This document shows, piece by piece, positions 54,379-57,345 of a DNA stretch of 64,000 bases. Within the stretch, counting starts at the first letter, position 1, and every line of letters begins with the position of its first letter. Made by a program: the position numbers and the translations under genes. The notes below the pieces were generated by a model. That model had not been told where the DNA came from. It made no database searches and was given only the letters and a program-made list of their open reading frames with translations. This DNA comes from Intoshia linei (lineage: Eukaryota; Animalia; Orthonectida). The stretch covers positions 1 through 64,000 of the forward strand of contig LWCA01000043.1 in NCBI GenBank assembly GCA_001642005.1. Reading direction: 5' to 3'.

Positions 54379-57345
54379 TTAGTTCCAAAACAATTGCTGT
54401 TGATTATGTATACTTTGTTGGTTATCAACTTTAGGCTGAGAACAATCAGACTGAAATTTGAAAAATTCAACAACTTGGTTTTCATCAATCAAATTAAATT
54501 TTACAGAGTCTTTGAAAACACTTTTAGTGTTTTTTAAGAAATTGGTAGTTTCGGAAAATGTTTTTAATCGAAATAAAGAGACTAAATTTGTCGGATCATA
54601 AAAATAAGCTGAAATATTTCCATACTCGGCAATTCGTGTCTTTAAAAGAAATCCATCAACCTAAAAAACATGTAATTGAATCACAATAAAAATACCTCAA
54701 CATTTTTTAAAATAACAAATGGAATATTATTCTCATTATAATTGCCAATTTTTGCAGATAATTCAACAGGTATAGAATTTTTCGGTCGAAGCGAGGAATT
54801 TTTCCAATAACTTGCCGTGCTAGGTGCAGTAAAAGAGTTTTGATCGTTTTGATACATTTCTAAAATAAATTAACTACAAAAAAAATTGCTGATACTTGGC
54901 TTAAAATGAGAGTCAACATGCTGATACTCATTTGATTTTTCATTGAATTTTGAAGTATAAGATTGAAAATTTGGATAATTGCAATTTGGTTCTTTATAAA
55001 AGCTTTGATTTTGATTATAAAAAAATTTTTTAATGTTTAAATCTTTATTAATATTATGTATTTCATACACAACACTGTCCAATTTTCTTTGAAACTCAAT
55101 ACTGGATGATTCCATATTAAAAGCAGTAGAATTGAGGGATGCATGTAACGTTTTTTCCTTCATGAGTAAATTTTTGAGAGAATTTTCCAAATGCACAATT
55201 TCGTTCCGCAAACCGTTCTTTGATTCAGAACTTAACCCGTCGTGATTCGTCCTGGAAGAGTAAACATTCCCACCATTTTGGTGTACATAGTTTTGATGAG
55301 ATGTATTATTGATAAATTTGGAATCATGACTAAAATTGGAGTAATTTTCGAGATTATTGTACTGGCAATAAAAATTTGATTTCCGAGAGTTTTGGAGAGA
55401 ATTTCTCGGATGAGAATCGAAACTGTTGTTTTTGTAAGCACCCTTGTTTTGTGAAAAATCATTTTCATGTACAGGCAATTTAGCGGGATAATACTGTTCG
55501 TACATTTTACTAATTTGTTCATCGTTAAAATTTTTCGCGTGTTGACGATAATTATTTTCATACTCTTCTTCTTTTCGGTTCATTTGAACAATTTCAGAGT
55601 TGTAATTTTGTTTACAAACGTCCTTTGAATAATCTTTGGAACTTGCTTCGGAACAATAGTCTCGTGATTCGAAATTACGAAAATCACTAGAATTATTAGC
55701 TTCATTCCAAATATGAGTACCATTCCTCTTGGAATCTTTTGACCCGGCGGAATCTCTTTGATTCCAACCAACAGAGCTAACTTTTCCGTCTCTTTTAATA
55801 TTTTGAGGTTGACTACAATTTAACCCATTTTTTTTATAATTAACATCGTTTGATTTACTATCAAAGTTTTTACCCTTAAAATTTTTATGAACATTGTTTT
55901 TACAAGATCGATCATAATCATTTTTATTGTTATAACTCGTGGTGTTTGAACTCTTGTAGTCACTCTTTTTTTTATAGTAGCTATCACCGTTCCATACGCT
56001 GTAATCTCTGTCACTGGGATTATCGCGAGGTTTACGAAGAGCTGTACCTTTGTCGCATTGTAAAATGTTGTCATTTTGTTTTTCAACCTTGCCATTGATA
56101 TCGGAAGGGCGGTTGACACGGAACTTTTCCCAAATCAGAGTACCATTATTGCTATGTTGAAATTTTTTTGAATTAACATGTTTCTTTGTCGGGATTTTAA
56201 GTCGAGAAATGTCCCAAATTTTCTTTTGACAAACAGGCAGTTGACCCCACTTTTCACTCGACTCTATTAATTCAATATTAGCAGATGATTCGTCGACCCC
56301 ATCAAATGTATTCGATCTGTCTGAACCGCGAAACTGACAATTTGGGGAAACGACAGAATTGTAGTTTTCGTGGTTTGGTGTTTCTGAGTGATTTTTAAAG
56401 TTTAGTGCAGTCTTGGAACCGAAATTTTGTAAATCTAAAGGGCCGTTGAGATAATTAGACATTTGGCTAAAATTAAATTGAGTCGGAGAAACATTCAAAT
56501 CAGTGTACGATGGGTTTTTTTTAGGATTGTGGAGATTCTGACTACTCCGGTCTGCACCATGAACGCTATGACCTTCCTTGGACATGTCCAAATTACTATT
56601 TTGAGATGAAAAATATCTGCAAACTTGTTGAGTATTTTGAAGTTTGATATCGATTGAAGTAGTTGTATTAAATATTTTGCAATCATTGTTCCAATTTTTG
56701 TTTCTATTTTTTACATTTTTGAAAAGGTGCAAGTTTGTATTACAGTTTGACCTCGATTCTTGATCAACTATTGGAAAAGTATTTTTTTTGTTTTTATCAT
56801 TATTTAACTGTGGCTCGAATTTAGATGTTATACATTTGGAATTAGAGTAACTATATTTATTGTCATCGATAGAAGTGCTCCATATATCTTGATGTTTTTG
56901 GTTTACTTGGAAATTTGTGTCAGCACCACGATAGCATTGCTCGTTCGGGGCTATATTATTAATATTAAAGTTTTCAAATGCATGGTGCATTGTTCCAAAT
57001 ACTCCTTGGTCTTTCTTCTTGGATCGTGTATAAGGTTTGAAGGATTGAATCGTATTGGAATCCTTCAAATTATTATCCAGGTTATGCGAATGATTGGAAT
57101 AATTCGAATTACTCGAATTTAGGTTATTTGTCAAATTGGGGAGCTTCCCCATAGCGAATAAAGAGTTTCCATCGTGTTCCAAGTGAGGCTTGTCACAATC
57201 AGACAGATTCATACCCGTATAGTACATTGAAGGCGCCTTAGAACCAATAACAGCTTCCTGACTTGGATTGCGTCCTTTAATTATGTATAAATGTTATCAA
57301 AAAAATTACCTGTTATTGTGATTTCTGTAGGATTTTCATTTTTCT
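54379..57345 (-). CDS. TNRC6: Highly diverged GW182/TNRC6 (gawky)-like miRNA silencing effector
   Basis: A long N/S/Q-rich disordered exon contains KWGQLPVCQKKIWDI, NNGTLIWE and RNGTHIWNE. After 36-nt and 35-nt introns comes a C-terminal RRM, FVILKNVE|VDGFLLKTRIAEYGNISAYFYD...IDENQVVEFF, resembling the GW182 RRM (WLVLxNLTPQIDGSTLRTLCMQHG). The start codon is uncertain (57227 or upstream). Confidence 0.7.

What the first reader, a model, noticed from the sequence alone, without database searches (positions are those of the whole stretch)
54379..57345. GW182/TNRC6 candidate that has almost lost its GW repeats
Seen: the 785-aa exon has only 8 Trp, with one WG and one GW. It still keeps KWGQLPVCQKKIWDI, NNGTLIWE and RNGTHIWNE, and a spliced C-terminal RRM ending QQLFWN*. 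Known: GW182 proteins have N-terminal WGxxxxxQxxxWD and NxGTxxW motifs, dozens of GW/WG Argonaute-binding repeats, a UBA domain, a PAM2 motif (EFxPGxPWKG) and this RRM. I see no PAM2 or UBA here. Inference: a naturally minimised miRNA effector that could show which Trp sites are indispensable, or a decaying miRNA pathway.
Basis: partly seen in the sequence, partly recalled or inferred. Interest (0 to 1): 0.8.

Follow-up and report, generated by a model that had tools for sequence, protein, structure and literature searches.

The report
GW-poor GW182-like genes in Intoshia
The tiny parasitic worm Intoshia linei has three unannotated genes that look like a stripped-down GW182, the adaptor through which microRNA-loaded Argonaute silences messenger RNAs. 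They keep about six conserved tryptophans instead of dozens, but the kinship rests on architecture and fold, not on significant sequence similarity.

Summary
A 785-aa minus-strand ORF (54870-57227) has 8 Trp, one WG and one GW. It carries the quoted motifs and splices through 36-nt and 35-nt GT-AG introns to a tail ending QQLFWN*. The genome is Intoshia linei, and the gene lies inside a fused "hypothetical protein" model, OAF71539.1.

Two more paralogues sit in tandem on contig C1964, and both are also GW-poor. All six Trp in the main exon of paralogue B match Trp in the window gene, against 27% overall identity.

The last exon folds as an RRM lacking its first strand. Its RNP positions are aliphatic and it has an extra C-terminal helix. 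The Drosophila GW182 RRM ranks 2nd and 3rd of 48,161 PDB representatives (Z 7.5).

The genome keeps an AGO about 70% identical to human AGO2, with all seven checked Trp-pocket residues, plus Drosha, Dicer, CNOT9, the CNOT1 CN9BD, mir-1 and mir-9. No other motif-I gene was found.

No sequence search or Pfam GW182 model gives a significant hit. No UBA or canonical PAM2 is seen.

Verdict: probably a divergent, Trp-minimised GW182-like effector family (about 0.7). "Decaying pathway" is not supported. The scan noted this same stretch once more (s1-778023).

The parts
57550..57588 (-). Putative first coding exon (MTNFEMGLRMSRS). It comes from the public model only and has no Trp.
   Evidence: Mapping of P0002 (OAF71539.1) on the window. 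GT donor seen. No independent support.
57308..57343 (-). Putative second small exon (KNENPTEITITG).
   Evidence: AG acceptor, GT donor. Public model only.
54896..57272 (-). Main exon (792 aa, containing the 785-aa ORF up to the donor). It is N/S/K-rich and holds 8 Trp.
56208..56252 (-). Motif-I-like block KWGQLPVCQKKIWDI (pattern WG-x3-[VI]-x-Q-x3-WD). Candidate primary Argonaute-binding site.
   Evidence: Conserved in paralogue B as NWGKAPINQSVIWD. A genome-wide DNA pattern finds the full W-G form only in these two genes.
56127..56150 (-). Motif-II-like block NNGTLIWE (N-x-G-T-x2-W-E).
   Evidence: Conserved in B as NTGTQVWE. The genome pattern gives the two paralogues plus two chance-level hits.
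55992..56006 (-). DYSVW, a Trp conserved in all three paralogues (DFKMW, DFGMW).
55701..55772 (-). VGWNQ ... RNGTHIWNE: two further Trp conserved with B (NEWNQ, YKIWN).
55011..55214 (-). Conserved block in heptad-like L/I/V spacing (GLRNEIVHLENSLKNLL...KDLNIKKFFYNQ). It sits where GW182 has its Q-rich region.
   Evidence: Conserved in all three paralogues. The coiled-coil character is inferred from the sequence only.
54960..54977 (-). YPNFQS: a conserved PNF(Q/N)(P/S) block, possibly a degenerate PAM2.
   Evidence: Alignment A2: YPNFQS, YPNFQP and NPNFNP. PF16608 finds nothing. Speculative.
54860..54895 (-). 36-nt phase-1 GT-AG intron that contains the stop codon of the 785-aa ORF.
   Evidence: A 36-nt intron lies at the same place in paralogue B. 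The public model uses the same junction.
54696..54859 (-). Exon 4: ...SYWKNSSLRPKN...IPFVILKNVE, with RRM strand beta1 (the RNP2 equivalent VILKNV).
   Evidence: Drosophila RNP2 is LLLKNL (PMC2685099).
54661..54695 (-). 35-nt phase-0 GT-AG intron between beta1 and VDG.
   Evidence: Position and phase are the same in all three paralogues (35, 41 and 35 nt).
54379..54660 (-). Last exon: the RRM from alpha1 to alpha3 (RNP1 equivalent NLVSLFRL; alpha3 ENQVVEFF), a disordered tail ending LFWN, and the stop codon.
   Evidence: AF2 models. Fold searches. The terminal WN* is conserved in B.

Best explanation
The gene encodes a highly divergent, tryptophan-minimised GW182/TNRC6-like adaptor of the miRNA-induced silencing complex. 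It is one of three Intoshia linei paralogues: A in this window, and B and C in tandem on contig C1964.

Inferred mechanism: the few conserved Trp of the disordered N-terminal half insert into the three Trp pockets of the PIWI domain of the conserved miRNA-class Argonaute. In A these are W327 and W338 (motif I), W366 (motif II), W412, W488 and W507. The remaining Trp recruit CCR4-NOT (CNOT9 and the CNOT1 CN9BD) to deadenylate and repress targets. These include the conserved C-terminal ...WN end and possibly the mid-region Trp acting as effector motifs.

The C-terminal RRM is a protein-interaction module that does not bind RNA, as in Drosophila GW182. The PAM2-MLLE link to PABP appears to have been lost on both sides. 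Paralogue C has lost motifs I and II and probably no longer binds Argonaute in this way.

Shown: gene structure, paralogy, Trp conservation, the RRM-like fold with aliphatic RNP positions, and presence of the partner proteins. Inferred: homology to GW182, all binding, and silencing activity.
For: 1. Architecture. The order is W motifs, then an N/Q-rich conserved helical block, then PNFQ(P/S), then an RRM, then a short tail ending in W. It is the same in A and B.

2. Motifs. WG-x3-[VI]-x-Q-x3-WD and N-x-G-T-x2-W-E lie 20 residues apart and are conserved between A and B at 33% local identity. Human TNRC6 AGO-binding sites are named Motif I, Motif II and AGO hook, each with at least 2 Trp at least 10 residues apart (PMC9262622). 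In Drosophila a single N-terminal GWG carries most AGO1 binding, and the other 11 repeats give only residual binding (PMC2965232).

3. Trp conservation. 5 of 6 (effectively 6 of 6) of B's Trp are conserved in A, against 27% overall identity.

4. RRM fold. AF2 models of the last exons of A and B give alpha1-beta2-beta3-alpha2-...-alpha3. Among 48,161 PDB representatives, Drosophila GW182 RRM 2wbr ranks 2nd (Z 7.5, rmsd 2.1 A over 68 aa, 16% identity) and 3rd (Z 7.5). Both alignments start VDG/TES at Drosophila residue 1128.

5. RNP positions. RNP2 is VILKNV / VLLTNI / IILTNI. The RNP1 equivalents are NLVSLFRL (A) and NLMSLFRL (B), and C is likewise aliphatic at RNP1 positions 3 and 5. These have aliphatic residues where canonical RRMs have aromatic ones, as published for GW182 (LLLKNL, QGIALCKY, extra alpha3; PMC2685099).

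6. Partners present:
- AGO on C1332: Piwi 380 bits, 568 bits to human AGO2. F653, K660, R688, C691, L694, Y698 and P700 are all identical (residue roles).
- Drosha on C1670 and a Dicer-1-like gene on C2932.
- CNOT9 and the CNOT1 CN9BD.
- mir-1 and mir-9 hairpins.

7. No competitor. Pfam GW182 models, the RRM-exon profile and the motif I and II DNA patterns find no other candidate in the 41.6-Mb assembly.

8. Precedent. Very divergent GW182 proteins that are hard to retrieve by homology search are reported in parasitic flatworms (PMC5594548).
Against: No statistically significant sequence similarity to any GW182 was found:
- Pfam is blank on every exon and on P0001.
- HMMER with the motif block over 1.84 billion proteins returns only the Intoshia proteins themselves.
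- The word searches are blank.
- PDB sequence searches are blank, including against 2wbr.
- The protein atlas is blank.

Fold evidence is weak. SHARP's RRM scores equal or higher than GW182's (Z 7.8 and 8.6). All Z values are at or near the level the tool says a common fold alone can give (typical best Z 7 to 8). Model pLDDT is only about 64, and alpha3 is about 57-67. beta1 was not modelled.

No UBA-like domain, no canonical PAM2 and almost no GW dipeptides are present.

My equation of the two N-terminal blocks with GW182 motifs I and II rests on recalled consensus, not on an alignment made here.

There is no expression evidence.
Confidence: 0.7

Rival explanations
1. This is a lineage-specific (orphan) orthonectid protein family with a C-terminal RRM-like protein-interaction domain and no descent from GW182. 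On this reading the WG...Q...WD and NxGTxxWE blocks resemble GW182 motifs by chance or by convergence, for example as an independently evolved Argonaute-hook protein like C. elegans AIN-1/2.
For: No search links it to any protein outside Intoshia. The Pfam GW182 models are silent. The best structural match is SHARP, not GW182. Short linear W motifs evolve de novo readily (PMC4615383).
Against: GW182 features co-occur in the right order. These are two N-terminal W blocks, a non-aromatic RNP1/RNP2 RRM with alpha3 at the C-terminal end, and LKN..(I/V)DG. 2wbr ranks in the top 3 of 48,161 for two models. Otherwise the genome would have a conserved AGO with intact Trp pockets and no GW182 at all.
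Confidence: 0.2
2. This is a decaying GW182 relic in a collapsing miRNA pathway. On this reading the genes are drifting, no longer function as AGO adaptors, and the loss of GW repeats reflects relaxed selection.
For: let-7 and miR-124 were not found at up to 3 mismatches, and miR-10/100 gave only chance-level hits. Paralogue C has lost motifs I and II. PAM2 is absent and PABPC MLLE is undetectable.
Against: All three paralogues keep long open frames and conserved splice sites. Trp are selectively conserved. AGO is about 70% identical to human AGO2 with intact pockets. Drosha and Dicer are present. mir-1 and mir-9 hairpins are present.
Confidence: 0.07
3. The family belongs to another known group of RRMs that carry an extra helix, such as SPEN/SHARP-like or LARP7 xRRM-like.
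For: 4p6q (SHARP) is the top fold match, and the LARP7 xRRM scores Z 6.8-7.3.
Against: Pfam finds no La motif, SPOC domain or additional RRM on any part. There is a single RRM at the extreme C-terminus after a long disordered W-bearing region. Identity to these chains is 9-15%.
Confidence: 0.03

Closest known systems
Drosophila Gawky (GW182) and vertebrate TNRC6A-C
   Same: A disordered N-terminal half carries W motifs, including two conserved blocks of the motif I / motif II type. A low-complexity helical region follows. A C-terminal RRM has aliphatic residues at the aromatic RNP positions and an extra alpha3 helix. A short W-containing C-terminal tail ends the protein. The partner set is present in the genome: AGO with three Trp pockets, CNOT1 and CNOT9.
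   Different: It has 10 Trp in about 970 aa (A) and 7 in about 650 aa (B). Drosophila, by contrast, has 12 N-terminal GW/WG repeats plus six M2 Trp. Only 1-2 GW/WG dipeptides remain. No UBA-like domain and no canonical PAM2 are seen, and the region is N-rich rather than Q-rich. There is no significant sequence similarity. The gene is triplicated in a 41.6-Mb genome.
C. elegans AIN-1 / AIN-2
   Same: They have few GW repeats and lack the UBA and a canonical Q-rich region, yet they act as AGO adaptors that recruit PABP, PAN2-PAN3 and CCR4-NOT (PMC4615383; PMC3384334, listed). They show that a W-poor adaptor can work.
   Different: AIN-1 and AIN-2 lack the RRM and are regarded as functional analogues rather than family members. 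The Intoshia proteins keep the C-terminal RRM and the motif I/II-like blocks.
Divergent GW182 candidates of parasitic flatworms (Fontenla et al. 2017, PMC5594548)
   Same: These are fast-evolving parasite lineages in which GW182 cannot be retrieved by simple homology search. Only dispersed motif conservation remains, and the genes are annotated as unknown proteins.
   Different: They belong to a different phylum. Orthonectids are placed with annelids (PMC11521371).

Membership tests
GW182/TNRC6 | N-terminal Argonaute-binding domain with multiple GW/WG repeats | tested here: not met
   A has one WG and one GW among 8 Trp in the main exon. B has one WG among 6 Trp. Six spaced Trp are conserved between A and B, which could still serve as W motifs.
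GW182/TNRC6 | Conserved motifs I and II within the N-terminal region | tested here: inconclusive
   The WG-x3-[VI]xQ-x3-WD and NxGTxxWE blocks are present and conserved in A and B. They are unique to these genes in the genome. Their identity with published motifs I and II rests on recalled consensus. A profile of this block hit no GW182 at E <= 0.001 in 1.84 billion proteins.
GW182/TNRC6 | Central UBA-like domain | tested here: not met
   Pfam is blank at E <= 10 on the main exon and at E <= 1 on P0001. This is a weak test, because no structure prediction was made of the middle region.
GW182/TNRC6 | [quoted passage not shown] | tested here: inconclusive
   The region is N/S/K-rich (N 15.7%, Q 5.2%) and contains a conserved helical block. 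This may be a compositional shift in a genome of about 25% GC.
GW182/TNRC6 | PAM2 motif that binds the MLLE domain of PABPC | tested here: not met
   PF16608 and PF12938 give no hit. Only a conserved PNF(Q/N)(P/S) block remains. The partner MLLE is also undetectable in the PABPC-like genes.
GW182/TNRC6 | C-terminal RRM with non-aromatic RNP1/RNP2 and an extra alpha3 helix | tested here: met
   RNP2 is VILKNV / VLLTNI / IILTNI, and the RNP1 equivalent is NLVSLFRL, against Drosophila LLLKNL and QGIALCKY. AF2 predicts alpha3. 2wbr scores Z 7.5 and ranks 2 and 3 of 48,161. Caveats: pLDDT is about 64, beta1 was not modelled, and SHARP scores equal or higher.
GW182/TNRC6 | Significant sequence or profile similarity to family members | tested here: not met
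   searches are all blank. No profile-profile library of eukaryotic families was available.
GW182/TNRC6 | Trp-dependent binding to the AGO PIWI pockets, and recruitment of CCR4-NOT and PAN2-PAN3 | not testable with these tools
   Only the partners' presence and pocket conservation could be shown.
GW182/TNRC6 | Shared intron position before (I/V)DG in the RRM | not testable with these tools
   The phase-0 intron is conserved in all three Intoshia paralogues. No other animal genome was available for comparison.

The most novel reading that the evidence does not exclude
Intoshia runs a working miRNA effector step with a natural minimal GW182. About six conserved Trp, in two motif blocks plus a few singles, suffice to engage all three AGO pockets. 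A terminal Trp suffices for CCR4-NOT. The PAM2-MLLE bridge to PABP has been discarded on both partners at once. This would be a natural experiment that defines the indispensable core of miRISC.
Probability: 0.3. Interest if true: 0.6.

Novelty: new variant of a known kind. Interest (0 to 1): 0.45.

Why it matters
GW182 proteins are long, disordered and redundant. Which of their dozens of tryptophans are needed has been worked out only by mutagenesis in flies and human cells. A natural protein that keeps the Argonaute partner almost unchanged, but retains about six conserved Trp, no UBA and no PAM2, would point directly at the minimal interface. It would also show how far the adaptor can erode in an extremely reduced animal.

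The finding also corrects the public annotation, where two fused "hypothetical protein" models hide three GW182-like genes. It shows that the orthonectid miRNA machinery is retained, even though at least let-7 and miR-124 are not detectable in the assembly.

The apparent joint loss of PAM2 and the PABPC MLLE domain is a testable case of co-evolutionary loss.

The interest is moderate. GW-poor adaptors (AIN-1/2) and divergent parasite GW182s are already known, and homology here is not yet proven.

Tried and rejected
Searches that gave nothing:
- Pfam on each exon and on P0001.
- PDB sequence searches with the RRM-exon profile, the motif-block profile and P0001. Only chance hits such as Rad50 and PemK appeared.
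- Word-based protein searches with the 785-aa exon, with the P0001 motif region and with whole P0001. Only self hits came back.
- The single large HMMER job, spent on the motif I/II block. It returned only the Intoshia models plus one spurious repeat protein, P0003. By my estimate a true GW182 would score about 25-30 bits on this short block, which is too low for a library of 1.8 billion proteins. The blank is therefore weak evidence.
- Protein atlas, twice.
- Foldseek alone. It found RRMs only, at E 0.2-0.8.

Tests for a conventional GW-rich gene in the same genome:
- Pfam PF10427, PF16608 and PF12938 gave nothing. The tool's controls are prokaryotes, so they cannot validate these blanks.
- A triple-WG DNA pattern gave fewer hits than its control, and those were mostly a dispersed repeat.
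- The fourth weak RRM-exon hit (C2509) lies opposite a WD40 gene and was rejected.
- Extra motif-II pattern hits on C46 and C150 are short or unrelated ORFs and were rejected.
- Extra motif-I pattern hits lack the Trp or contain stops.

Other:
- The let-7 Rfam scan scored only 57 of 6,670 candidates and is not informative.

Left out:
Exons were searched by reference. The only spliced sequences used were the public models P0001 and P0002, returned by a tool and passed by id.
- No contig looked human.
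Full report
**What is there**

The window is AT-rich animal DNA (about 25% GC). On the minus strand, ORF 54870-57227 encodes 785 aa with exactly 8 Trp, one WG and one GW.

The stop that ends this ORF lies inside a 36-nt phase-1 GT-AG intron (54860-54895). A 164-nt exon follows (...SYWKNSSLRPKN...IPFVILKNVE), then a 35-nt phase-0 intron (54661-54695). The last exon (54379-54660) runs VDGFLLK...QQLFWN*.

**Organism and annotation**

The assembly has 41.6 Mb in 3,520 contigs. The large HMMER search returned two public proteins. An exact look-up names them OAF71539.1 (A3Q56_00710) and OAF67665.1 (A3Q56_04603), both "hypothetical protein [Intoshia linei]".

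OAF71539.1 (P0002, 1932 aa) contains this gene with the same splice junctions that I derived. It adds two small upstream exons without Trp. It also leaves the last exon early, to fuse with downstream ADAM/ShK-type genes. The gene is therefore hidden in a fused, unnamed model.

**Paralogues**

Searching the genome with the last exon found two more copies in tandem on contig C1964 (sequence read).

- Paralogue B (8101-9807 plus 7790-8086) starts at its own ATG. It carries ENWGKAPINQSVIWD and NTGTQVWEKDG and ends ...NYNWN*.
- Paralogue C (2921-4519, 2648-2917, 2436-2675) has lost both N-terminal blocks and keeps 2 Trp.

The public model OAF67665.1 fuses B and C. The three genes align along their whole length. 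Both introns described above are conserved in position and phase. The 36-nt intron recurs in B, and the pre-VDG intron is 35, 41 and 35 nt in A, B and C. All three are GW-poor, so the refuting case "a conventional paralogue next door" does not apply.

**Tryptophan conservation**

A and B are 27% identical over the main exon. MAFFT nonetheless aligns 5 of B's 6 Trp to Trp in A. The sixth (NEWNQ against VGWNQ) is displaced by five columns.

The conserved Trp in A are W327, W338, W366, W412, W488 and W507, spaced 11 to 76 residues apart. Both proteins also end in WN. GW/WG dipeptides are not enriched: about 0.6 are expected from 3.7% Gly. The signal lies in the Trp themselves, as expected for short linear W motifs, which are "often, but not always" flanked by Gly (bioRxiv 2025.10.18.683247).

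**The C-terminal domain**

I folded the last exons of A and B separately, each with the three-sequence alignment. Mean pLDDT was about 64 to 65. Both models give helix, strand, strand, helix, then a C-terminal helix. That is an RRM lacking beta1, which is encoded by the previous exon and was not joined.

- Foldseek returned only RRMs, with E between 0.2 and 0.8.
- The Foldseek-independent search of 48,161 PDB representatives put the Drosophila GW182 RRM (2wbr) at rank 2 for A (Z 7.5, rmsd 2.1 A, 68 residues, 16% identity) and rank 3 for B (Z 7.5).
- The SHARP RRM ranked first in both (Z 7.8 and 8.6).
- Most of the other top hits are RRMs reported to carry an extra C-terminal helix, such as the LARP7 xRRM.

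These Z values are at the level the tool warns can reflect a common fold alone, so this result is supportive rather than decisive.

The sequence adds detail. Eulalio et al. (PMC2685099) report that the GW182 RRM has RNP2 LLLKNL and RNP1 QGIALCKY, with aliphatic residues at the aromatic positions, plus an alpha3 helix packed on the sheet. The Intoshia proteins have VILKNV, VLLTNI and IILTNI for RNP2. The RNP1 equivalents are NLVSLFRL and NLMSLFRL in A and B, with C likewise aliphatic at positions 3 and 5. A predicted alpha3 (ENQVVEFF in A) follows. Both structural alignments start at Drosophila residue 1128, which places the paralogues' VDG/TES where I recall the Drosophila IDG.

**Partners in the genome**

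- Contig C1332 encodes an AGO-clade Argonaute (Piwi 380 bits). Its MID-PIWI part scores 568 bits against human AGO2 in an alignment that is ungapped across the pocket region.
- The residues named in papers as key to the three Trp pockets or to TNRC6 binding are all identical. They are K660 and L694 (pocket 1), F653 (pocket 2), R688 (pocket 3), Y698, C691 and P700. Wallmann and Van de Pette report that three fully conserved Trp sites are a feature of metazoan AGOs only (PMC12477606).
- Drosha is on C1670 and a Dicer-1-like gene on C2932.
- CNOT9 and the CNOT1 CN9BD are present.
miR-10/100 gives only chance-level hits.
- A mir-1 hairpin is present (C2413; Rfam 41.7 bits, E 7e-6, full-length alignment).
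- A mir-9 hairpin is present (C732; first 17 nt identical, Rfam 41.3 bits, fold z-score -5.2).

The pathway is therefore reduced in its conserved miRNAs but is not decaying.

**Is there another GW182?**

- The Pfam models Ago_hook, TNRC6-PABC_bdg and M_domain find nothing in the assembly. The tool's control genomes are prokaryotes, so these blanks are weak.
- A DNA pattern for NxGTxxWE finds A, B and two unrelated short ORFs.
- A pattern for G-x3-[IVM]xQ-x3-W[DE] finds 11 places. Only A and B have the preceding Trp and an open frame.
- A triple-WG pattern is not enriched over its control.

No conventional GW-rich candidate emerged. A split or unassembled gene cannot be excluded.

**What failed**

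No sequence method links these proteins to any GW182: Pfam, the PDB sequence searches, three word searches, the 1.84-billion-protein HMMER search with the motif block, and the protein atlas.

I could not obtain any bona fide GW182 sequence through the tools for a targeted comparison. I did not type one from memory. My statement that the two N-terminal blocks correspond to GW182 motifs I and II therefore rests on recalled consensus. It also rests on the literature's description of motifs I and II as AGO-binding sites, and of a single N-terminal GWG as the main AGO1 determinant in the fly.

The spliced step was left out, and only the public models P0001 and P0002 were used by id.

**PAM2 and PABP**

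No canonical PAM2 is present. A PNF(Q/N)(P/S) block conserved in all three paralogues sits between the helical region and the RRM, roughly where I recall GW182 carrying its PAM2. It might be a remnant, but this is speculative.

On the partner side, the only MLLE domain detected in the genome belongs to a HECT ligase. Several PABPC-like genes match the full-length PABP model only up to about position 500 of 595. Three of their ORFs show no MLLE at E <= 1, including a complete 542-aa one with four RRMs. One tail looks like a degenerate MLLE without the KITGMLLE signature (the signature is from my own knowledge). Both sides of the PAM2-MLLE contact thus seem to have eroded. In Drosophila the PAM2 is dispensable for silencing (PMC3553986), so such a loss is plausible.

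**Conclusion**

The most likely reading (about 0.7) is a divergent GW182-like adaptor family with a minimal set of conserved Trp. A and B are probably functional AGO adaptors. C is a derivative without the AGO-binding blocks.

It works like a GW182 on present evidence. Formal family membership is not established, because several defining features were tested and not met: GW repeats, UBA, PAM2 and significant similarity. The main rival (about 0.2) is an unrelated or convergent lineage-specific family.

W-poor adaptors (AIN-1/2) and divergent parasite GW182s are already known. I therefore rate this a new variant of a known kind, of moderate interest.

Noticed in passing
G000:C1964:2436-9807 (L005), minus strand: Two further GW182-like paralogues (B and C) lie in tandem. 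The public model OAF67665.1 fuses them into one 1313-aa protein. Paralogue C has lost both N-terminal W blocks.
   Followed up: yes
window 47294-54415 and beyond, minus strand: The public model OAF71539.1 (1932 aa) fuses the GW182-like gene to downstream metalloprotease-like and ShK-domain/mucin-like genes. It does so by leaving the last exon at 54415 instead of running to the stop at 54379.
   Followed up: partly
G000:C641 (L024), C3042 (L026), C2684 (L025, L027), C1476 (L028); C3322 (L019): Several PABPC-like genes have four RRMs, but no MLLE domain is detectable in them. The only MLLE hit in the genome sits in a HECT (UBR5-like) ligase. The C641 tail looks like a degenerate MLLE.
   Followed up: partly
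whole assembly G000; C2413:1118-1188 (L031), C732:6517-6539 (L034): let-7 and miR-124 are not found at up to 3 mismatches, and miR-10/100 gives only chance-level hits. Convincing mir-1 and mir-9 hairpins are present. This suggests partial loss of the conserved bilaterian miRNA set.
   Followed up: partly
G000:C96:5620-6453 (L009); C1421:7601-8721 (L010, L011); C2596:967-1131 (L012): Further Piwi-domain loci exist. One is a 735-aa open frame (262 bits). The others are fragments interrupted by stops. Whether they belong to the PIWI or AGO clade, and whether they are intact, was not examined.
   Followed up: no
many contigs, e.g. C1194:39881-39920, C1252:20140-20179, C1368:614-653: A dispersed repeat shares a near-identical 40-nt core (TGGGGCAAACCTCGGTGTGGGGCATACTCGTGTTTTGGGG). 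It turned up in the WG-pattern scan and is probably a transposable element.
   Followed up: no
window 4435-5818 (+), 34361-35728 (-), 27949-29076 (-): Other genes lie in the window. There are SLC6-type transporter exons, a dynamin-like (OPA1-type) GTPase ORF, and a 375-aa ORF of unknown kind. Introns of about 35 nt appear typical of this genome.
   Followed up: no
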